Positions 7,031-57,096 of a stretch of DNA of 64,000 nucleotides are shown here, piece after piece (within the stretch, counting starts at the first letter, position 1; every line of letters begins with the position of its first letter). The notes under the pieces were generated by a model, which saw nothing but the letters and a program-made list of their open reading frames with translations, made no database searches and had not been told where the DNA came from. Both the position numbers and the translations under genes were made by a program. The stretch lies in sequence record MW812339.1; one strand, given 5' to 3'.

Positions 7031-7039
7031 ATTGTAATG

Positions 7040-7112
7040 CGACTCTGGCAGGACTTGAACCTGCGACATATGGATTAACAGTCCACCGTTCTACCGACTG
7101 AACTACAGAGTC
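7040..7112 (-). tRNA. trnN: tRNA-Asn(GUU)
   Basis: Canonical cloverleaf GACTCTG/CAGAGTC, loop CTGTTAA, T loop TTCAAGT; CCA not encoded. Confidence 0.95.
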
Positions 7113-7120
7113 CTAATAGG

Positions 7121-7195
7121 CGAGCACCGAGCGGGAATCGAACCCGCGAATATCCGATTATGAGTCGGGTGTTAACCAGCTTAACAGCCGGGCTC
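7121..7195 (-). tRNA. tRNA with CAU anticodon (Ile2-like loop) and irregular acceptor stem
   Basis: Loop CTCATAA in CCCGA/TCGGA stem, T arm GCGGG-TTCGATT-CCCGC; acceptor GAGCCCGG/TCGGTGCTC has an extra pair and a bulge; G discriminator. Confidence 0.75.
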
Positions 7196-7196
7196 T

Positions 7197-7261
7197 TGTC
7201 CTTGATGGATTTGAACCATCCTCGTCATTTGACTGACGACCCCAGACCGACCGGGAAAGAC
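7197..7261 (-). ncRNA. Minimal tRNA-like element, 65 nt
   Basis: Intact T arm GATGG-TTCAAAT-CCATC, 6-bp acceptor GTCTTT/AAGGAC, 6-bp anticodon-like stem with 6-nt loop GTCAAA, shortened D arm. Confidence 0.55.
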
Positions 7262-7265
7262 CATT

Positions 7266-7355
7266 GTGGGGCGAGGGAACGTCCAGGCTTCCGCCCAGAG
7301 ACATGGGGTGCGAATCCGTCATGTCTGTCATCACTGATGGTGACAACGCTCCCAC
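7266..7355 (-). ncRNA. Four-way-junction structured RNA candidate, 90 nt (not a tRNA)
   Basis: Closing stem GTGGGAGCG/CGCCCCAC; arms TGTCA/TGACA, GACATG/CATGTC, TCTGGGC-GGAA-GCCTGGA (GNRA loop). Confidence 0.55.
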
Positions 7356-7359
7356 TGTT

Positions 7360-7440
7360 TGGCTCCGTGATGTGGAGTTGAACCACACTTCTCTCTAGCC
7401 GGTGGAGACGTAAGAGAATCTAAGCCGACTTAGTCACGGC
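7360..7440 (-). ncRNA. Non-canonical tRNA-like RNA, 81 nt, encoded CCA
   Basis: GCCGTGA/TCACGGA acceptor (G1-A72 mismatch), GCCA end, T arm TGTGG-TTCAACT-CCACA, 5-bp D stem with 4-nt loop, elongated bulged anticodon arm. Confidence 0.65.
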
Positions 7441-7448
7441 AATACGGT

Positions 7449-7518
7449 CGTCGGTTATGGGATTCTAACCCACCTAGTCTGGTCGCGAGCCCAGTGCATC
7501 ACAGTTTTGCTTACCGAC
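7449..7518 (-). ncRNA. Degenerate tRNA (CGC-like anticodon, 8-nt loop, mutated T loop)
   Basis: GTCGGT/ACCGAC acceptor, GCA/TGC D stem, CTGG/CCAG stem with loop GCTCGCGA, T loop TTAGAAT. Confidence 0.55.
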
Positions 7519-7587
7519 ATGGAAATAGAAGGAGTAGGCGTGTAACGACGCCTCGTGTTAGTTGCTCGTCCGTAGACGCTACCCTTA

Positions 7588-7660
7588 GGGCATCCTGGTG
7601 AGGAGTCGAACCTCAACCGTTTCCTGCATAAGCCGGATACGGTGTTCCACAACCCAGGCG
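7588..7660 (-). ncRNA. Non-canonical tRNA-like RNA with extended anticodon arm
   Basis: T arm TGAGG-TTCGACT-CCTCA, acceptor CGCCTGG/CCAGGATG with bulge, 3-bp D stem, long CGT..TCC/GGA..ACG arm. Confidence 0.55.
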
Positions 7661-7665
7661 ACTGA

Positions 7666-7815
7666 AGTCGTACCCCTAAGGCTCTCCTTAGGAAAAGGGT
7701 GACACCCCTCCGAATTTCACGGAGTTCTCAAGGCTGCACTAGCTGAACGATTTACGAACCGCTGTAAGGCTGCCAGTTATCTTCGCTGCTCATTGGCGGC
7801 GAGTAACCAGTGTCA
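7666..7815 (-). ncRNA. Multi-hairpin structured element downstream of the HNH gene
   Basis: TGACAC/GTGTCA closing pair, CTCCG/CGGAG and TCGC/GCGA arms, CCTAAGG-AGAG-CCTTAGG hairpin. Confidence 0.35.
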
Positions 7816-7821
7816 TTGTTC

Positions 7822-8358
7822 TTAAGCTGCTTTGGCCTTGTGTGTCTTAGAAAGATACCGTGCCGGGTTTTGGCGAATATCCACAATTGTGGAGTGGTGC
7901 ACGCCGTACTTCTCACCAACAGAACGAACCGTGCCATGTTCATTCTCTAATATCTCTCGGACATCAGAACCAGAGAGCTTGATATTTCTCGAACCATCCG
8001 GTGGGACAAACAACCCTTCTTCTATCGCGTGGATAGTATTCTCACGATGCGTTACCCATTCCAGATTGACTGCCCTAGGGTCAGTCTTCTTTCCGTTTTT
8101 GTGGTTTACACACGGTTTGTTTTCTGGATTAGGCACAAAGGCAGTGGCCACTTGGATGTGCGTTTTGAGAACGACGTTTGTTCCTTTTCTTCCACCGACC
8201 TTGGAGATGTGCCCAGGATACCCATTGATTAAGTTCTGACGCACAGGTCTGTTGCTGCGTTTTGAGAACATAACACCATCTTCATTAACTAGAAAATGGT
8301 CTGGGCAACTCACACAGTCTTTCCACTCGCCGGCTGGAAGGTTTAACTCTTTACTCAT
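7822..8358 (-). CDS. Free-standing HNH homing endonuclease (NUMOD4-like N-terminus, HNH_3-type core)
   Basis: VNHKNGKKTDPRAVNLEWVTHRENTIHA matches the HNH_3 pattern; C-terminal HTH-like segment. Confidence 0.9.
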   Translation of the reverse strand: MSKELNLPAGEWKDCVSCPDHFLVNEDGVMFSKRSNRPVRQNLINGYPGHISKVGGRKGTNVVLKTHIQVATAFVPNPENKPCVNHKNGKKTDPRAVNLEWVTHRENTIHAIEEGLFVPPDGSRNIKLSGSDVREILENEHGTVRSVGEKYGVHHSTIVDIRQNPARYLSKTHKAKAA

Positions 8359-8384
8359 TGTAACCTCTCAAACAGATTAGATTA

Positions 8385-8404
8385 TCACGTAGATAATATC
8401 TATC
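8385..8404 (-). promoter_or_regulatory. Putative early phage promoter motif upstream of HNH
   Basis: GATAGATATTATCTACGTGA, identical core to the 5897 copy. Confidence 0.7.
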
Positions 8405-8421
8405 CGAGATTTAATAGGTAT

Positions 8422-8504
8422 TGGGGAAGGGTGGATTTGAACCACCGAAGGCCGAAGCCGACAGATTTACAGTCTGTTCCATTTAACCGCTCTGGAACTT
8501 CCCC
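8422..8504 (-). tRNA. trnY: tRNA-Tyr(GUA)
   Basis: GGGGAAG/CTTCCCC acceptor, loop CTGTAAA, long variable arm with UUCG loop, T loop TTCAAAT. Confidence 0.95.
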
Positions 8505-8510
8505 TGAAAG

Positions 8511-9230
8511 GGTGCCGGTGCATCCCAGCTTACGTTCGGCGCTTTCAGCTCCCTCGGGCTTATTAGCAATGAACACTTACCGGGCGCACCGACATATACC
8601 ACAGTAACCTCGTTGGAAGTCACTCTGGTATTGCTCGTTGCATACTACTGTGTTTACACGTAAATGATTTAGCGAGTGCCTATTAATTATATTAATTAAC
8701 CTAAATTAAGAATGAGGGTGATGGACTTCTTCTTCTGAGCCAGGGTATCCCCCGGTCTTAGCGTCTCCAAGCACCACCCTCTTTCACATTACGCATTGGT
8801 AGCTCTCTTGACTACCGGTGGCCGTTGCCACCCTAACACTGGGAACCTAATCCCATTCGGTCATCAGATTGTAGTTTACAGGCGTAGCGAGTCGGCTTAA
8901 TGGGCCGGTGCTTGCCTGTCCGATTTGGACGGTTGTCGTGGTGACGCTAGTCTGTAATCGGGTCCCTTGCGGGTAAACCCATCGCCTGTAACTCGAACGT
9001 GACTAAATACCCAGAACCGCCAACCAGCGAAGAGCTGGCTAATGAGTCTGAATATTTCACGCATAATCATCTCTCGTATCGAATGAGGTCATGACCGGTC
9101 AGATACCCAGCAACGTGAACGCCCTGGTCTTTTGTGTATCTGGCTGCTACGGATTTAGGGGTGCACCGTAGGTCTACGCTGCGTTACAACTGCTACCGGC
9201 CCATGTGGGACATCAACCCACACAGCAATC
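8511..9230 (-). ncRNA. Run of structured ncRNA candidates upstream of tRNA-Tyr
   Basis: Units 8511-8590, 8596-8631, 8714-8781, 8807-8856, 8876-8991 (GCAA tetraloop), 9093-9174; mismatches on plus strand become G-U pairs on minus strand. Confidence 0.5.
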
Positions 9231-9292
9231 AGAAGGTTCACCAAAAGCCCGTCAATCCCAACCACAGGACCACCGGTTACAACAAAGAGGGT

Positions 9293-9310
9293 GGTGGGCC
9301 GAAGCCCACC
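9293..9310 (-). terminator. UUCG hairpin after small ORF (terminator or processing stem)
   Basis: GGTGGGC-TTCG-GCCCACC; U-tract weak. Confidence 0.5.
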
Positions 9311-9312
9311 GT

Positions 9313-9555
9313 TTAGCCAGCATTGAACGATTCATGAACGACGGTCCCAGCAGGAAAGTGCGTGGTACCAACCAGAGTGGCGGTCAGGGTTAACCCTTCA
9401 TCCCAGCGCTCTTGTGGTTCCCATCGGCAGTCCTTCCAATGACCACGGTCGGGCGGAATTGCACACGCAGCTTGCTCCGAGGGAGCCGCCACGATTATGG
9501 AATCAAATTCGTCATACCCGATATCGTCAGTTCGTTCTAGCAGATACAGATTCAT
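9313..9555 (-). CDS. Hypothetical protein, 80 aa
   Basis: GGAG SD before ATG 9555 (MNLYLLERTDDIGYDEFD). Confidence 0.7.
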   Translation of the reverse strand: MNLYLLERTDDIGYDEFDSIIVAAPSEQAACAIPPDRGHWKDCRWEPQERWDEGLTLTATLVGTTHFPAGTVVHESFNAG

Positions 9556-9619
9556 GATGTTCTCCAACAGTTGACAAATCTGTGTCTTCTGTGTTGAACG
9601 TGAACCTGTTGGCCAAATG

Positions 9620-9695
9620 TGGCAGGGGCACAAGGATTCGAACCTTGGACACCCGGTTTTGGAGACCGGTGCTCTGCCAGCTGAGCTATGCCCCT
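9620..9695 (-). tRNA. trnW: tRNA-Trp(CCA), CCA end encoded
   Basis: Canonical cloverleaf AGGGGCA/TGCCCCT, loop CTCCAAA, GCCA end. Confidence 0.97.
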
Positions 9696-51336: not shown

Positions 51337-51762
51337 TTATCGCAAATCGAACTCGAAGAAAATGCGCACAGTGTTGTCGGGCAACATGGACACCAGCAGC
51401 GTATTCTCGCCCAAGTCTTTTGGCCAGTCGGTAAGATAGGCCATGTCTGTACCGTAAAGGCTCGACAACTTCAGCACGTTACCTGGAGAGAAACAACCGC
51501 CCCGCCAGTTATGGGTGTAGAGAACCTTCTGCATGAACTCCGGCACCACTTGCCAGGAGAATAAGTTACGTCGGTCGGTCCAGACGTTCTCAGGGATTAG
51601 CCGGTCACTGATGACAAACTCAAATCCACCCCGCTTCTCCGACATCTGCTTCAGCCTGAACATCTGCTGCAGGGTCAAGCCGACGTCACCCCAGTCTTCA
51701 CCGTTTACTGTCAGGCGATTGCCATCCGCGACAAAGTCGAGGTCGTGCAACACTTTCGCCAT
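51337..51762 (-). CDS. Hypothetical protein, 141 aa
   Basis: Coupled to MazG-like gene. Confidence 0.7.
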   Translation of the reverse strand: MAKVLHDLDFVADGNRLTVNGEDWGDVGLTLQQMFRLKQMSEKRGGFEFVISDRLIPENVWTDRRNLFSWQVVPEFMQKVLYTHNWRGGCFSPGNVLKLSSLYGTDMAYLTDWPKDLGENTLLVSMLPDNTVRIFFEFDLR

Positions 51763-52610
51763 TAGGCGTCAGCTTCTTTGATGAAGATACCGTCGGCATT
51801 CAGGAAACCTTTACGGTCTTTGATTTCGTCCCAGGCCAGAGAGAAACATTTCTCCAGCGTCATGTCGTACGCATTGGCCAATGCGTTAGCATAACGAATC
51901 ATTTCTTCGTAATGGTATTCGATGTTGGTACAAACGGAGTTGTCAAAGCGTTTGAAGTCAAGCTTTTTCGGTGAATCGATGCCAGCTTCGTCCCACAGAT
52001 AGTCGATCGCATTGGTGATGTGGAAACGCATTTTGTGGAACAGGTAATGTGCGTTGCCAATAGGCGCTTCTTCTCGACGAACACCATCGACCATGCAGGC
52101 AATTTCAAGCGCTTCATAGCCGGTTAGTTCCATCAGATTAACCAGCACCACGAGTGCGTCTCCCACACCGTCCATGATGTCGTTGTGGCGACTCTTGCCA
52201 ACGCCTGTAGCGGCTTCACCGTCTTCTTCGTAAAGTTTGGTTCCCTGGGTGTACCAGATGCCGTTTTCCAGAATACCACGGGCCTTAGACCACTCTACAA
52301 CATTGTGAACGCAACCGGCGATGGTATAAAGAGGGATATAACGTGGGTGTGTGGTGGTCGCGCCAGTAAACTCGGCACGTTTCATGTCGAGTTTAATTTC
52401 GCAATCCGAAATATCTAAACGGCTGTCTTCACGTTTAACTTTACCTTCAACACGCACCTTACCGGTCGTGGTGTTAAGCGCCATCGCGTAGATGGATTCG
52501 AATTCGATATTGCCGCCCATTGCTTTAATAGCAGGATTGACCTGGTACAACATATCTTCGTTAATGATCATTACGTTGTAAGGAATTTGGATAGAGAAAG
52601 TCTCGCCCAT
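51762..52610 (-). CDS. MazG-like NTP pyrophosphohydrolase with N-terminal extra domain
   Basis: W...RG...KLYEE.GE...DIMDGVGDALVVLVNL...CFSLAWDEIKDRKG....G.FIKE. Confidence 0.82.
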   Translation of the reverse strand: MGETFSIQIPYNVMIINEDMLYQVNPAIKAMGGNIEFESIYAMALNTTTGKVRVEGKVKREDSRLDISDCEIKLDMKRAEFTGATTTHPRYIPLYTIAGCVHNVVEWSKARGILENGIWYTQGTKLYEEDGEAATGVGKSRHNDIMDGVGDALVVLVNLMELTGYEALEIACMVDGVRREEAPIGNAHYLFHKMRFHITNAIDYLWDEAGIDSPKKLDFKRFDNSVCTNIEYHYEEMIRYANALANAYDMTLEKCFSLAWDEIKDRKGFLNADGIFIKEADA

Positions 52611-52647
52611 GATAACAGCTCCGTTTGGTTAAAAAAAATAAGAGAGG

Positions 52648-52672
52648 TAGCCTCTGCCATAAGCAGAGGCTA
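52648..52672 (-). terminator. Rho-independent terminator
   Basis: TAGCCTCTGC/GCAGAGGCTA stem, U-run on minus strand. Confidence 0.8.
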
Positions 52673-52676
52673 ATCT

Positions 52677-52865
52677 TTAAATTTTGCACGCCCCGCCAGG
52701 ACAGCTTTCGTCATCCTTTGCTGCGTCCACGCCACCTTCAACGGTGAGGTTTGGGTCTAAGCCCGGTAGAGAGAATTCATCTTCTTTCTGCATCGGAACA
52801 TCAACACCCAAGCCATCGACGTGCATGAAAGTCGTGGTTTGCCCACGGCCTAATTCTCCAGCCAT
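52677..52865 (-). CDS. Small acidic protein ending in a ribonucleotide-reductase-like redox tail (CxxxxC)
   Basis: GAGG SD, own terminator; C-terminus DDESCPGGACKI vs E. coli NrdA DDGCESGACKI. Confidence 0.75.
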   Translation of the reverse strand: MAGELGRGQTTTFMHVDGLGVDVPMQKEDEFSLPGLDPNLTVEGGVDAAKDDESCPGGACKI

Positions 52866-52875
52866 TGTAAATACC

Positions 52876-53328
52876 TCAGTTAATCAAGTGAATCACCACA
52901 TCCGATTCTACCATCGTGGCTAGACTTCGGAAAATCTTATCGTAGCTAAACTTGTGGAAGAAGAAGCTGGCTTCATCAACGAGTACCAGCCCGTACTTCT
53001 GCCCCTGCCAGTTTTCTGGCAGATAACCGCAAAGTGATGTCAGACTACTGATACCTGTGCTTTTCTTGGTATATCGTCTTACCACATCGTCCCGCAAACT
53101 CACATTGTGAATCAGATAAAGGACGTGGCCATCAAACTTCGCAGCCATATCAACTGCATGGGTTGTAACGCCCTTCTGACGACCGGCACCATAACGAATT
53201 GTGCGGAATTCGCTAAGCGCGATATGCGGCATCATGTTACAGCTCTTTGCGATATCAGAATCCAGGGCAATAAGACCTTTGGACAGTTCTTTCACCACAA
53301 CATCATAATCGATAGGGGTCATAGACAT
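52876..53328 (-). CDS. Small degenerate P-loop NTPase-like protein, 150 aa
   Basis: GRQKGVTT (Walker-A-like, Lys replaced) and LVLVDEA (Walker B). Confidence 0.5.
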   Translation of the reverse strand: MSMTPIDYDVVVKELSKGLIALDSDIAKSCNMMPHIALSEFRTIRYGAGRQKGVTTHAVDMAAKFDGHVLYLIHNVSLRDDVVRRYTKKSTGISSLTSLCGYLPENWQGQKYGLVLVDEASFFFHKFSYDKIFRSLATMVESDVVIHLIN

Positions 53329-53342
53329 CTGTTGTACCTCTG

Positions 53343-54107
53343 TTAGAATTTAACCATACGGGGATTACCATCTGCACCAATCTTGACGGTAGAGTTACTG
53401 GCTTCCTCGCGAACCCAGGCAGGCAGTTCTTCGCGGAAAGCCGGATTCAGGAACCAGACCTGTTCGTAGCGTCCATCGATCTTCTCGACCACACGTTCCC
53501 ATCCTTCAACATAAGTCAGCGAGAACCATTTGAAACGAGCCTGGCGGGCCCAGTAGTGATATTCAATGGCACGTCCAACATACGTCAGGACATTGATCAG
53601 AACCTGATAGAAGCTCGGTTTGCCGACGAACCGGGTGCATTCATAGCAAACCGTTTCTTCACCCGGAAAGAAATAATCCTCGAAATTTTTCTGCGTCGTT
53701 ATTGGTATCAGCACGGAGTCGTCATTGGCACACAAGAGCCAGTGATTGGTTGTGAATGGTTCTACGCCCGCAGGGAAACGTGCCCAGCGATAGTTTTCTA
53801 TCGGTACCCCAATATTCGGACGCAATCCCGCCACGACCGTTTCGATCTTTCCAGGGTTCACTGGTGTGTATACCAGACAATCGATTTTGACGTTCTCTTT
53901 CTCCCGCTCGGGTTCGGCAGGACGTGAACGACGACCTAATAACAGAATCCCATCGAGGTCAGTTTGCCCGATTTCGATGATGTCGAGTTCTGACGACGGA
54001 AGTTGTCGTTGAGCATCTTCCATGTCCGCAGCGCCCAACAAACCATATTCGTAGTCATCGAATTCCACCGTGTAGAACTCGTCAGAAAACGCGAACAGCT
54101 TTTGCAT
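53343..54107 (-). CDS. Hypothetical protein, about 254 aa
   Basis: GGAG SD before ATG 54107. Confidence 0.7.
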   Translation of the reverse strand: MQKLFAFSDEFYTVEFDDYEYGLLGAADMEDAQRQLPSSELDIIEIGQTDLDGILLLGRRSRPAEPEREKENVKIDCLVYTPVNPGKIETVVAGLRPNIGVPIENYRWARFPAGVEPFTTNHWLLCANDDSVLIPITTQKNFEDYFFPGEETVCYECTRFVGKPSFYQVLINVLTYVGRAIEYHYWARQARFKWFSLTYVEGWERVVEKIDGRYEQVWFLNPAFREELPAWVREEASNSTVKIGADGNPRMVKF

Positions 54108-54911: not shown

Positions 54912-55072
54912 GGCTTCACCTCAATCGCGTTAAGTTTAGCTTCGTATTTCTTAGGGACAAGTAGAATGTTGTGCCCGTGATGCGTTCCGCGTCGGCACTT
55001 CACCCACATCCCGTTAATGACCACCCAACGATGAGTGGCCGTATCTTTTCTCTTGCCCCTAGGAAGACTCAT
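54908..55072 (-). CDS. Small basic protein, 54 aa (below ORF-track cutoff)
   Basis: [16 protein letters not shown]...; fills the gap with overlapping start/stop on both sides. Confidence 0.6.
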
Positions 55073-56214
55073 ATTGCTACCGGTGCCTTAATTGGTGCGT
55101 CGCATTCGTAACCGACTACTTCGAAATCATCGAATTCATAATCGAAGATAGAGTCGGGTTTACGTTTGATGCGCAGCGTAGGAAGTTTGTGCGGAGTACG
55201 CGTAAGCTGCAGCTTCGCCTGCTCAACGTGATTGGAGTACAGATGGACATCACCGCCTGTCCAGACGAAATCGCCTACTGCCATGTTAGCCTGTTGTGCA
55301 AACATGTGCACCAACAACGCGTATGAAGCAATGTTGAACGGCACGCCCAGGAACATGTCAGCGCTGCGTTGATACAGCTGACAAGACAATACACGCTCTG
55401 GAGTGTTCGCCATGATGTAATTGAAACGTTCGCCTTCAAACGCGTTACGATCGAGATTTTGTTTTTCGAGATTTGACATGAACTCTCTAAACTTATCTTG
55501 GTCGAGATTATCGAAGAACCAAGATTCGCGTTCTTCGAAGTCCATTTCCCGCGTGTAAAACTGGAAGAATGCGTGACACGGCGCTAACGCCATTTTATCC
55601 AGTTCACCAACGTTCCAGGCACTAACAATTATGCGTCGATTGTCCGGGTCGTTCTTCAGCTGTTCCATAACGTTGGCGATTTGATCGTGATGTCGACCAT
55701 CCGGACCAACCCAGTCACGCCACTGCTTACCGTAGATAGGACCTAACTCACCATCGGCTTTGATGGTGATAATTCCTACCCTTGGAACCTGGTGCACATC
55801 CAGGATGGCCATGATTTCGGCATCAGTTTTCTCTTTTAGCCCGGCTTCCCAGTCCAGATAAAATTGAGAAACGCCAGTTTCGGTGGTGTTCATGTCACGG
55901 AAGATGGCCAGGCGATAATCGACGGGAAGCTCGCCTTCTTCTTCAGAGACTATTCTTTCCCCTGCCCACTCGTCCCAAATGGTGACGTTGTGTTCATGCA
56001 AATAGGCAACGTTGGTGTAGCCCTTCAGGAACCAGATCAGTTCGTGAACAATAGAACGTAAATGGCAACGCTTGGTGGTGACAATCGGGAAACCCTCTTG
56101 CAGGTTGAAACGCATCTGCGGGCCAAACAGCGAAAGGGTGCCTGTGCCGGTACGGTCGGCCTTTGGATGCCCTTGCTGCAGAACATTTTGGAGTAAATCA
56201 AGATACTGATACAT
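55069..56214 (-). CDS. thyA: Thymidylate synthase with two insertions, 381 aa
   Basis: [59 protein letters not shown]. Confidence 0.97.
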
Positions 56215-56217
56215 TGG

Positions 56218-57096
56218 TTATAAATCCTTCTTCAATTCATTTATGATGAAGAGCAAATCTTCGTTCATCTTGGCCGCTATAGTACCGTCGCTATAACTGA
56301 CAGCGATTGCGGGGACGCGTTCAAATAACAGACCGTGCCATTTCGTGTCGTGGCGAATGTACTTTTCCATCGCCTGGTCAATCGCGTCATTGACTTTGCG
56401 ATTGATGTCGTCGAGTTTACTCTCATCGAACGGTGCATGTTTATAGCGTTCAAGTGACGACGCCAGACATTGACTCAATGCGGATTCGATGTAGAATCGT
56501 GTTGTTGCACCCGATGCGTAAATATCCCCGGCAAAGTCACCGATAGATCCATCACGCTTTACAGAATCAGGCGCAGGCATGAACATTCCAAATTCGTTCA
56601 TTTCGCCTTTCTTGGCAATCAGTGCCCGATGGCCGTTGTAGACTACGCGGTCGAACTCCAAACCACACGACCGGGCCAATCCATTCAGAGCCGTTAAGAA
56701 ACCGTTGAATGATTGCAGGAAAGAGTAGTAATCAATCGCTTCGGTTTCTTCCGTGTTGCTGAGCAAGTCCATCATGTTCAGCGCAACAGCGTGAAGCATT
56801 TGATGTTTGTTGGACGGTTTGGTTTTCAGTGCGATGTTGTGATCAAGCGCATGGGTGAGGTCAATCTCACGCCCTTTCAGACTGAACTGTATCAAACCGA
56901 AGTATGCCCAAATTAGACTACCGATGCCTGCCGCAACTTGCAGGTTGTCGCTCTTCTGCACTCCGTGGGAAACATCCCCGAAGCAACGGTAGATTTTGGA
57001 GCGCTGTAAACTGTAATCGCCGTGTTCGAAAACACGGGCGTCATGATACCAGCCGTTTACGGCATAAATTTGAACCTGGGCATTAGGCAGCTGCAT
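56218..57096 (-). CDS. Degenerate MazG-like paralog, 292 aa
   Basis: Aligns by eye to the 51762 MazG domain, with acidic metal ligands replaced. Confidence 0.5.
   Translation of the reverse strand: MQLPNAQVQIYAVNGWYHDARVFEHGDYSLQRSKIYRCFGDVSHGVQKSDNLQVAAGIGSLIWAYFGLIQFSLKGREIDLTHALDHNIALKTKPSNKHQMLHAVALNMMDLLSNTEETEAIDYYSFLQSFNGFLTALNGLARSCGLEFDRVVYNGHRALIAKKGEMNEFGMFMPAPDSVKRDGSIGDFAGDIYASGATTRFYIESALSQCLASSLERYKHAPFDESKLDDINRKVNDAIDQAMEKYIRHDTKWHGLLFERVPAIAVSYSDGTIAAKMNEDLLFIINELKKDL

What the first reader, a model, noticed from the sequence alone, without database searches (positions are those of the whole stretch)
52677..52865. Stand-alone peptide resembling the redox-active C-terminal tail of ribonucleotide reductase
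Seen: a 62-aa acidic, probably disordered protein with good SD and its own terminator, ending DDESCPGGACKI. Established: E. coli NrdA ends DDGCESGACKI, and this CxxxxC pair carries electrons from thioredoxin/glutaredoxin to the active site and can act between subunits. No RNR body is encoded next to it; neighbours include MazG-like and thyA genes. Inference: a trans-acting redox shuttle that speeds host or phage RNR turnover, or a decoy that captures Trx/Grx or blocks RNR. I know of no described system like this.
Basis: partly seen in the sequence, partly recalled or inferred. Interest (0 to 1): 0.8.

Follow-up and report, generated by a model that had tools for sequence, protein, structure and literature searches.

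The report
Free-standing copy of RNR's redox tail
A giant Erwinia phage that has no ribonucleotide reductase of its own makes a tiny acidic protein whose last dozen residues copy the electron-carrying tail of the host's reductase. The same uncharacterised mini-protein turns up in several unrelated phages and in some bacterial chromosomes.

Summary
Window 52677..52865 (-) encodes a 62-aa acidic protein ending DDESCPGGACKI. It has a GAGG ribosome-binding site and a strong 3' hairpin.

**Likeness to NrdA.** A profile of its relatives, searched against all PDB sequences, returned only class Ia RNR alpha chains. Every match lay at their extreme C-terminus and included the NrdA peptide solved bound to glutaredoxin.

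**Conservation.** The gene is conserved in at least four jumbo-phage genera and three other phage lineages. In each lineage it sits among dNTP-metabolism genes such as thyA or thyX, MazG, dCMP deaminase, dUTPase and dNMP kinase. Both cysteines and the G-A-C-K-[I/L] end are invariant while their codons vary.

**No phage RNR.** The window's phage, Erwinia phage pEa_SNUABM_29, has no RNR of any class. The gene is therefore neither a split nor a broken nrdA.

**Also bacterial.** The family also occurs in bacterial chromosomes. In Neisseriaceae it lies inside the isc operon, between iscS and iscU.

**Most likely mechanism.** It is a free redox arm recharged by host thioredoxin or glutaredoxin that acts on host NrdA. 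Whether it boosts or blocks the enzyme is unresolved.

No database family with a known function and no paper describes it.

The parts
52677..52865 (-). CDS of the 62-aa acidic peptide (QVW55239.1 in MW812339.1; orthologue of SPN3US_0234), stop codon included
   Evidence: PHROG 38753 at E 5e-30
52680..52715 (-). C-terminal tail module, residues 51-62 (DDESCPGGACKI). It has two Cys four residues apart and the chain ends two residues after the second Cys, the same layout as the last residues of E. coli and Erwinia NrdA.
   Evidence: (Erwinia sp. NrdA end)
52725..52781 (-). Second conserved stretch, residues 29-47 (acidic/aromatic element, then L-P-G-L-D, then V-E-G-G-V-D in the window protein). 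It is shared with phage and Neisseriaceae homologues but absent from NrdA.
   Evidence: alignments; 96 of 120 family representatives have the V-E-G-G-like element
52874..52877 (-). Shine-Dalgarno GAGG, 8 nt upstream of the ATG
   Evidence: read
52648..52672 (-). 11-bp GC-rich hairpin immediately after the stop codon, followed by a T run (52631-52638): terminator-like or an RNA-stabilising 3' end
   Evidence: Equivalent hairpins with different stem sequences follow the gene in unrelated phage lineages.
51762..52610 (-). Context: MazG-like nucleotide pyrophosphohydrolase, the most constant downstream neighbour
   Evidence: PHROG 7855 at E 2e-124; present next to the peptide in 22 loci
52876..53328 (-). 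Context: 150-aa P-loop-like protein of unknown function, the usual upstream neighbour in jumbo phages
   Evidence: no Pfam or PDB hit
53343..54107 (-). Context: 254-aa protein of unknown function (PHROG 10453). In one metagenomic jumbo phage its homologue carries the tail module fused in frame at its C-terminus.
55069..56214 (-). Context: thymidylate synthase (381 aa, with insertions)
   Evidence: Pfam PF00303 at E 3e-112

Best explanation
The gene encodes a free-standing, flexible copy of the redox-active C-terminal arm of class Ia ribonucleotide reductase alpha (NrdA).

Proposed mechanism:
1. The two cysteines are reduced by the host's thioredoxin or glutaredoxin 1, exactly as those enzymes reduce the tethered NrdA arm.
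2. The reduced peptide enters the active site of host NrdA.
3. There it reduces the disulfide left after each turnover.

The phage has no RNR but must make about 250 kb of DNA per progeny genome. An extra diffusible arm would add a second route of re-reduction while the enzyme's own oxidised arm is away being recharged. This would raise dNTP output from the host enzyme.

Shown: the sequence identity of the arm, its conservation under purifying selection, the absence of a phage RNR, and the embedding in dNTP-metabolism gene clusters.

Inferred: the binding partners and the direction of the effect.
For: 1. A profile of the family hits only RNR alpha C-termini in the PDB, including the NrdA peptide solved in complex with glutaredoxin. 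The likely host genus has the same NrdA end (Erwinia sp.).

2. In 19 relatives found by whole-protein similarity, both Cys and G-A-C-K are invariant, while the N-terminal half varies in length and sequence. Of 120 profile-retrieved cluster representatives, 118 end in the same eight-residue layout at the very C-terminus, and 115 have no other Cys.

3. The codons of the invariant residues vary freely: 4 Gly, 4 Ala, 2 Cys, 2 Lys and 2 Ile codons are used. Selection therefore acts on the protein.

4. The phage has no RNR of any class. Published gene lists for the SPN3US-like Salmonella phages name DHFR, thymidylate synthase and thymidylate kinase but no RNR (PMC6614189).

5. In four phage lineages the gene sits among dNTP genes. 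These are thyA, MazG and dCMP deaminase in the jumbo phages; dCMP deaminase and thyA; dNMP kinase, ThyX and dUTPase; and dUTPase directly upstream.

6. Biochemical plausibility: with mouse RNR, giving the active site a second, direct dithiol route in addition to the tail route raised activity up to 3-fold. The authors reason that the oxidised tail must leave the site to be re-reduced (PMC4078304).

7. The stand-alone genes come from phages of, or chromosomes of, Gamma- and Betaproteobacteria. These are the groups in which a scan found NrdA with this same tail.
Against: - No interaction has been observed, and the direction of the effect (boost or block) is not addressed by any data here.
- A free peptide competes with a tethered arm that has a very high local concentration, so a kinetic gain is not guaranteed.
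- Homologues in Neisseriaceae lie in the isc operon, not near nrd genes. Other bacterial copies have unrelated neighbours.
- One phage fuses the module to a different protein, which hints at another client.
- The second conserved stretch (residues 29-47) has no counterpart in NrdA and is unexplained.
- RNR absence was verified genome-wide only for this one phage.
- Many loci were retrieved with a tail pattern, which inflates apparent tail invariance. The sets do not have this bias.
Confidence: 0.4

Rival explanations
1. Competitive blocker or decoy. The peptide occupies the site on NrdA where the enzyme's own arm must dock, or it soaks up reduced thioredoxin or glutaredoxin. Either way host RNR regeneration slows. 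This would work like the small disordered RNR inhibitors of yeasts.
For: It rests on the same mimicry evidence. The extra conserved stretch upstream of the tail could supply the added affinity a free competitor needs against a tethered arm. Chromosomal copies co-transcribed with stress-responsive isc genes could be a brake on replication. A paper title listed (Zhang et al. 2007) records that yeast Sml1 inhibits C-terminus-dependent regeneration; the details are from my own knowledge.
Against: The phage has no RNR of its own and carries the gene inside clusters otherwise devoted to increasing dNTP supply. Shutting down the only RNR available looks self-defeating. A substrate-like decoy would simply be reduced and released unless something re-oxidises it.
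Confidence: 0.25
2. Generic portable thiol arm. The module is a thioredoxin/glutaredoxin-rechargeable dithiol that serves clients other than RNR. Candidates are a phage enzyme encoded nearby, or IscS/IscU (persulfide handling) in Neisseriaceae. On this view NrdA's tail is just the best-known fused instance of the module.
For: In Neisseria and Eikenella the gene lies between iscS and iscU. In one jumbo phage the module is fused in frame to the homologue of the window's 254-aa neighbour (BLASTP E 3e-14). N-terminal parts differ between subfamilies while the tail is fixed, as expected for one docking end and different client ends.
Against: No candidate client with redox cysteines was found. A CxxC in the window's 254-aa protein is not conserved in the fused homologue. 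Bacterial neighbourhoods outside Neisseriaceae are unrelated to one another. Across phage lineages the constant theme is deoxynucleotide metabolism, whose only thiol-dependent step is RNR.
Confidence: 0.2
3. Precursor of a modified peptide (RiPP) or a small metal-binding or Fe-S-binding peptide that uses its two cysteines for something unrelated to RNR. The likeness to NrdA would then be convergent.
For: It is a short, Cys-containing, acidic peptide. The phage encodes a radical SAM enzyme. The Neisseriaceae copy lies in an Fe-S assembly operon.
Against: The radical SAM gene is 60 kb away and no maturase is adjacent in any lineage. There is no NCBIfam or Pfam precursor family hit. Identity to the NrdA end extends over about 11 residues, including the position of the chain terminus, which convergence does not readily explain.
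Confidence: 0.05
4. Non-functional leftover of an nrdA gene, or a chance ORF.
For: The tail could have originated by capture of an nrdA 3' end.
Against: The ORF is conserved across at least four jumbo-phage genera, other phage lineages and bacteria. It keeps its own start, ribosome-binding site and 3' hairpin. The invariant residues show synonymous variation. Nothing upstream of the last 12 or so residues resembles NrdA. The pattern is expected 0 times by chance.
Confidence: 0.02

Closest known systems
C-terminal redox tail of class Ia RNR alpha (E. coli NrdA residues ~747-761; the peptide in PDB 1QFN bound to glutaredoxin 1)
   Same: Same layout and nearly the same residues: an acidic run, Cys, four residues, Cys, two residues, then the chain end. 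The G-A-C-K-I end is identical. The region is flexible or disordered.
   Different: It is not attached to any RNR body. It is encoded as its own 62-aa gene with an unrelated N-terminal part and a second conserved stretch that NrdA lacks.
Small disordered RNR regulators of yeasts (Sml1, Hug1, Dif1, Spd1)
   Same: Short, probably disordered proteins proposed to act on the large RNR subunit. Sml1 interferes with C-terminus-dependent regeneration (title cited; mechanism from my own knowledge).
   Different: No sequence relationship was detected. The yeast proteins do not copy the redox cysteine pair, are eukaryotic and are inhibitors. The direction of action is unknown here.
Dedicated RNR reductants: thioredoxin, glutaredoxin, NrdH, and the Grx domain fused to NrdB in Facklamia ignava (PMC6187632)
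   Same: Accessory thiol-redox components of the RNR cycle that can be encoded separately or fused.
   Different: Those are folded thioredoxin-fold proteins with a CxxC site, and they reduce the tail. This peptide copies the tail itself and has no fold-family hit.
C-terminal peptides of the RNR small subunit used as competitive inhibitors of subunit association
   Same: The concept of an RNR tail peptide acting in trans on the large subunit.
   Different: That is a different tail (beta, not alpha). I tested whether the acidic/aromatic part of the family resembles the NrdB C-terminus. The match was not significant against composition-preserving shuffles.
PHROGs 38753, 14561, 24014
   Same: The window protein is a member (E 5e-30, 9e-14, 1e-12).
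   Different: These families carry no functional annotation.

Membership tests
Class Ia RNR alpha subunit (NrdA) | Catalytic ten-stranded barrel (Pfam Ribonuc_red_lgC/lgN) with active-site cysteines | tested here: not met
   The 62-aa protein has no Pfam hit. tblastn with Erwinia NrdA finds nothing in the whole phage genome.
Class Ia RNR alpha subunit (NrdA) | Flexible C-terminal tail with a Cys pair at the chain end | tested here: met
   The profile matches NrdA 747-761 end-to-end, and the only PDB hits are RNR alpha.
Split or interrupted nrdA (tail encoded apart from a tailless body) | A tailless nrdA body elsewhere in the same genome | tested here: not met
   The phage has no RNR. Neisseria and Rheinheimera, which carry stand-alone copies, have full-length NrdA with its own tail.
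Thioredoxin-fold redoxins (Trx, Grx, NrdH) | Thioredoxin fold with a CxxC active site | tested here: not met
   No Pfam, NCBIfam or PDB sequence hit. The Cys spacing is four residues. The C-terminal half is predicted to lack regular structure.
RiPP precursor peptides | Adjacent maturation enzyme and a recognised precursor family | tested here: not met
   No maturase is among the neighbours in any lineage. The only radical SAM gene is 60 kb away. There is no NCBIfam hit.
Known anti-phage defence or counter-defence proteins (PADLOC) | Match to a PADLOC model | tested here: not met
   No hit for the peptide or for four neighbours.
PHROG 38753 (unknown function) | Full-length profile match | tested here: met
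   E 5.3e-30 over residues 1-62 of 62.
Sml1-like RNR inhibitors | Binding to the large subunit and inhibition of tail-dependent regeneration | not testable with these tools
   No sequence relationship was found in any search. Binding cannot be assessed here.

The most novel reading that the evidence does not exclude
A widespread family of 40-100-aa proteins is a portable swinging arm: a thioredoxin/glutaredoxin-rechargeable dithiol that works in trans. On this reading, RNR-less phages use it to take over the redox cycle of the host's class Ia RNR. Some bacteria, such as Neisseriaceae with the copy in their isc operon, use it to couple thiol redox state or Fe-S biogenesis to RNR or to sulfur transfer. 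It would be the first natural trans-acting RNR tail and the first small-protein regulator of bacterial RNR.
Probability: 0.3. Interest if true: 0.9.

Novelty: new variant of a known kind. Interest (0 to 1): 0.8.

Why it matters
The RNR alpha tail is the obligatory last link between cellular reductants and DNA-precursor synthesis, and until now it has been known only as a tethered part of the enzyme. A conserved free-standing copy would be a new way for viruses to control host nucleotide supply. This applies to phages that lack RNR and keep the gene among their dNTP genes. It would also be a clear case of short-motif mimicry in bacteria.

The chromosomal copies, including one in every sampled Neisseria isc operon, suggest an unrecognised small protein in bacterial redox or Fe-S physiology.

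The family is small, sharply defined and easy to recognise from sequence. That makes questions about how the tail docks to the active site and to Trx/Grx directly approachable by structural and expression data.

Tried and rejected
1. **Beta-tail mimicry.** I asked whether the acidic/aromatic part of the peptides copies the NrdB C-terminus. A position matrix built from 53 distinct NrdB ends was scored against 43 peptides and compared with 2000 composition-preserving shuffles each. Most p-values were above 0.05 (range 0.009-0.9). I rejected this as compositional similarity.

2. **Single-sequence searches.** phmmer against the PDB, Pfam, NCBIfam and PADLOC gave no hits. Only the family profile recovered NrdA.

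3. **Word-indexed protein search with the single peptide.** It returned only itself. The exhaustive phmmer search and the profile search were needed.

4. **AF2 of the 254-aa neighbour.** The alignment was shallow and the model had mean pLDDT 43. It is unusable, so no fold search was run.

5. **tblastn of NrdA against all phage records.** The aim was to ask which peptide-bearing phages have RNR. I instead fetched the whole genome of this phage.

6. **Upstream ~250-aa genes in different lineages.** They are not detectably homologous to each other, so there is no conserved gene pair beyond the jumbo phages.

7. **Literature.** I found nothing on SPN3US gp234, on a stand-alone RNR tail, or on a small ORF between Neisseria iscS and iscU. 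Two papers I wanted were not held.

8. **Recent horizontal transfer.** Local base composition is uniform.

Full report
**Source and observation**

The window is part of Erwinia phage pEa_SNUABM_29 (MW812339.1, genus Seoulvirus, 248,836 bp). Window position 52000 equals record position 176000. In that record every gene is annotated 'hypothetical protein'.

It has 62 codons, an ATG start and ends DDESCPGGACKI. By direct count it is strongly acidic, with 12 Asp/Glu against 4 Lys/Arg.

- A GAGG lies 8 nt upstream of the ATG.
- An 11-bp GC-rich hairpin begins 4 nt after the stop and is followed by a T run.
- A degenerate DNA pattern for the eight-residue end occurs once in the window and never in 100 shuffles.

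**Is the likeness to the RNR tail real?**

I did not rely on memory. The single peptide has no PDB, Pfam, NCBIfam or PADLOC hit.

A profile of 19 relatives (alignment A1) was searched against all 177,635 distinct PDB sequences at E<=10. It returned 14 sequences and every one is an RNR alpha chain. Each is aligned from profile position 46 or 48 to the last or second-last profile position, and onto the very last residues of the chain. E. coli NrdA matches at 747-761 with E 0.03-0.05.

One hit is 1qfn_B, the 25-residue NrdA C-terminal peptide. The tool's alignment shows E. coli NrdA ending DDGCESGACKI. NrdA of an Erwinia species ends the same way.

The phage peptide therefore shares four things with NrdA:
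- the acidic run;
- both cysteines at the same spacing;
- the G-A-C-K-I end;
- the position of the chain terminus.

**Conservation**

tblastn finds the gene in 76 phage records. They include Seoulvirus (SPN3US, where it is SPN3US_0234), Derbicusvirus, Machinavirus and Alexandravirus. An exhaustive phmmer search of 1.84 billion representatives adds metagenomic relatives.

These sets were found by whole-protein similarity, so they are not biased towards the tail. In all 19 aligned members the columns for both Cys and for G, A and K are invariant. The last residue is Ile in 18 and Leu in 1. The N-terminal half varies widely in length and sequence.

Codon usage was tallied across 37 distinct genes:

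| Invariant position | Codons used |
|---|---|
| First Cys | TGT 17, TGC 20 |
| Gly | four codons |
| Ala | four codons |
| Second Cys | two codons |
| Lys | two codons |
| Ile | two codons |

This is purifying selection on the protein. One caveat applies: part of that set was retrieved with a tail pattern.

A profile search of 5.8 billion proteins gives 286 clusters at E<=0.01. Of the 120 listed:
- 118 end in the same eight-residue layout at the very C-terminus;
- median length is about 50 aa;
- median net charge is -11;
- 115 have no cysteine elsewhere.

None has a Pfam domain or any name other than 'hypothetical protein'.

**Not a broken or split nrdA**

I fetched the whole phage genome.

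- tblastn with Erwinia NrdA and NrdB gives only chance-level matches (best E 0.17).
- Of the 40 ORFs of 450-1100 aa, the 38 scanned hit no RNR Pfam family of any class.
- No small ORF with an obvious redoxin-type CxxC site stood out.
- A paper on 21 SPN3US-like Salmonella phages lists DHFR, thymidylate synthase, thymidylate kinase and radical SAM genes as the metabolic genes of note and mentions no RNR (PMC6614189).

Nothing upstream of the last 12 or so residues of the peptides resembles NrdA.

**Genomic context in phages**

In the jumbo phages the order is thyA, several small genes, a ~250-aa protein (PHROG 10453), a ~150-aa P-loop-like protein, the peptide, then a MazG-like pyrophosphohydrolase. 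In Alexandravirus a dCMP deaminase is nearby.

Three other phage lineages carry the gene:
- A 95-kb contig has dCMP deaminase two genes upstream and thyA downstream.
- ~60-kb contigs have a dNMP-kinase-like gene next door and ThyX and dUTPase within 4 kb.
- A 154-kb contig has dUTPase immediately upstream.

No RNR lies within 10 kb in any of them. In most lineages the gene is followed by a strong GC hairpin plus a T run, with unrelated stem sequences.

In one metagenomic jumbo phage (L138) the tail module is fused in frame to the homologue of the 254-aa neighbour.

**Not phage-only**

Most are full-length nrdA of Gamma- and Betaproteobacteria, including Erwinia, Pantoea, Pectobacterium, Yersinia, Shewanella, Aeromonas, Neisseria and Pasteurellaceae.

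Some hits are stand-alone ORFs of 42-64 aa.

- In Rheinheimera, Alishewanella and Chromatiaceae the ORF lies between a pyrC-like amidohydrolase and an MFS transporter.
- In Neisseria, including N. meningitidis where it was seen on 104 contigs, it lies inside the isc operon in the order iscR, iscS, peptide, iscU, iscA, hscB.
- In Eikenella it likewise lies between iscS and iscU, with extra genes interspersed in that operon.
- Other copies sit next to LysR/LysE genes, mnmG with a YfbR-like nucleotidase, or purM.

These genera also have a complete NrdA with its own tail. The Neisseria and phage proteins share the second conserved stretch as well as the tail, so they are homologues.

**Mechanism**

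What is established from the literature: class I RNRs have a disordered C-terminal tail whose cysteine pair reduces the active site (PMC9669993). That tail is in turn reduced by thioredoxins or glutaredoxins (PMC4078304).

The stand-alone protein keeps every conserved feature of that tail, including the free carboxyl end two residues after the second Cys. The simplest inference is that it meets the same partners.

For a phage without RNR, whose copy of the gene sits among enzymes that increase dNTP supply, I favour a supporting role. The free arm would be recharged by host Trx/Grx and would reduce host NrdA while the enzyme's own oxidised arm is away. Supplying a second, direct dithiol route raised mouse RNR activity up to 3-fold for just this stated reason (PMC4078304).

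The opposite sign, a competitor or decoy, cannot be excluded. It is favoured by the extra conserved stretch, which could add affinity.

The isc-operon copies and the fusion in L138 keep open a third reading: a general thiol arm with other clients.

I put these at 0.40, 0.25 and 0.20. A RiPP or metal-binding role gets 0.05 and a non-functional remnant 0.02.

**Leads that failed**

- The idea that the acidic/aromatic part mimics the NrdB C-terminus did not survive a shuffle test.
- The AF2 model of the 254-aa neighbour was too poor to search with.
- The peptide model shows no regular structure in residues 27-62.
- A tblastn census of RNR across all phage records hit the record cap.
- Literature searches found no description of this protein.

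**Limits**

- RNR absence is proven genome-wide for one phage only.
- Several loci were ascertained by the tail pattern.
- E-values of the PDB hits are modest (0.03-0.5) because the match is only 13-15 residues. The weight of that result lies in the exclusivity and end-to-end register of the hits.
- No binding or activity data exist.

Among them were a C-terminal peptide of a herpesvirus RNR small subunit, a mammalian counterpart, redoxin active-site motifs and a kinase motif. All sequence statements above rest on tool output.

Noticed in passing
window 55069-56214 (-): The thymidylate synthase is 381 aa. The 266-position Pfam model spans residues 3-381, so roughly 115 residues are insertions relative to ordinary ThyA. 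The SPN3US orthologue is shorter.
   Followed up: no
window 51762-52610 (-) and 56218-57096 (-): Two MazG-like paralogues flank the nucleotide-metabolism block. The second (PHROG 10269) is only weakly similar to the MazG PHROG.
   Followed up: no
window 52876-53328 (-): A 150-aa protein with visible Walker A- and Walker B-like stretches, PHROG 2586, with no Pfam or PDB hit. It is the usual upstream neighbour of the peptide in jumbo phages.
   Followed up: partly
L138:5029-6093 (+) (IMG/VR UViG_3300011862_000001): The tail module is fused in frame to the C-terminus of the homologue of the window's 254-aa protein (53343-54107), and the P-loop gene is absent there. This is either a possible functional link or a lost stop.
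   Followed up: partly
L160-L164 (Neisseria meningitidis, Eikenella corrodens): A 42-48-aa homologue lies inside the isc operon between iscS and iscU. It is often unannotated or annotated with a longer start. The 'viral contig' L154 is this chromosomal locus beside a P2-like prophage, not a phage gene.
   Followed up: partly
L159:613-1974 (+) = MW812339.1 236649-237977 (outside the window): A 454-aa radical SAM protein with a CxxxCxxC motif and a Fer4_12 hit, 60 kb from the peptide gene.
   Followed up: no
downstream of the peptide stop in L002, L006-L008, L132, L135, L138-L140, L143, L146, L149, L151, L168, L169: A strong GC hairpin (-15 to -26 kcal/mol) plus a T run follows the gene in unrelated phage lineages, with different stem sequences. 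It is absent where the next gene overlaps, as in Derbicusvirus.
   Followed up: partly
Salmonella phage SPFM records (hits H50-H55, H58, H59); P0005, P0014: In eight SPFM records the peptide ORF is recovered in two tblastn pieces, and two database proteins are frame-shifted calls. That is one interruption each, probably sequencing error.
   Followed up: no
L086 (contig labelled Terrabacter sp., 778 bp): It carries a Neisseria-type peptide gene with masked bases. This is probably contamination of an actinobacterial assembly.
   Followed up: no
L077 (Psychrosphaera algicola): The nrdA reading frame is interrupted once near its 3' end, so the tail falls in another frame. This is either an assembly error or a pseudogene.
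   Followed up: no
window ~7039-9695 (record 131039-133695): A cluster of four phage tRNA genes (Asn, Ile2, Tyr, Trp) is annotated in the record.
   Followed up: no
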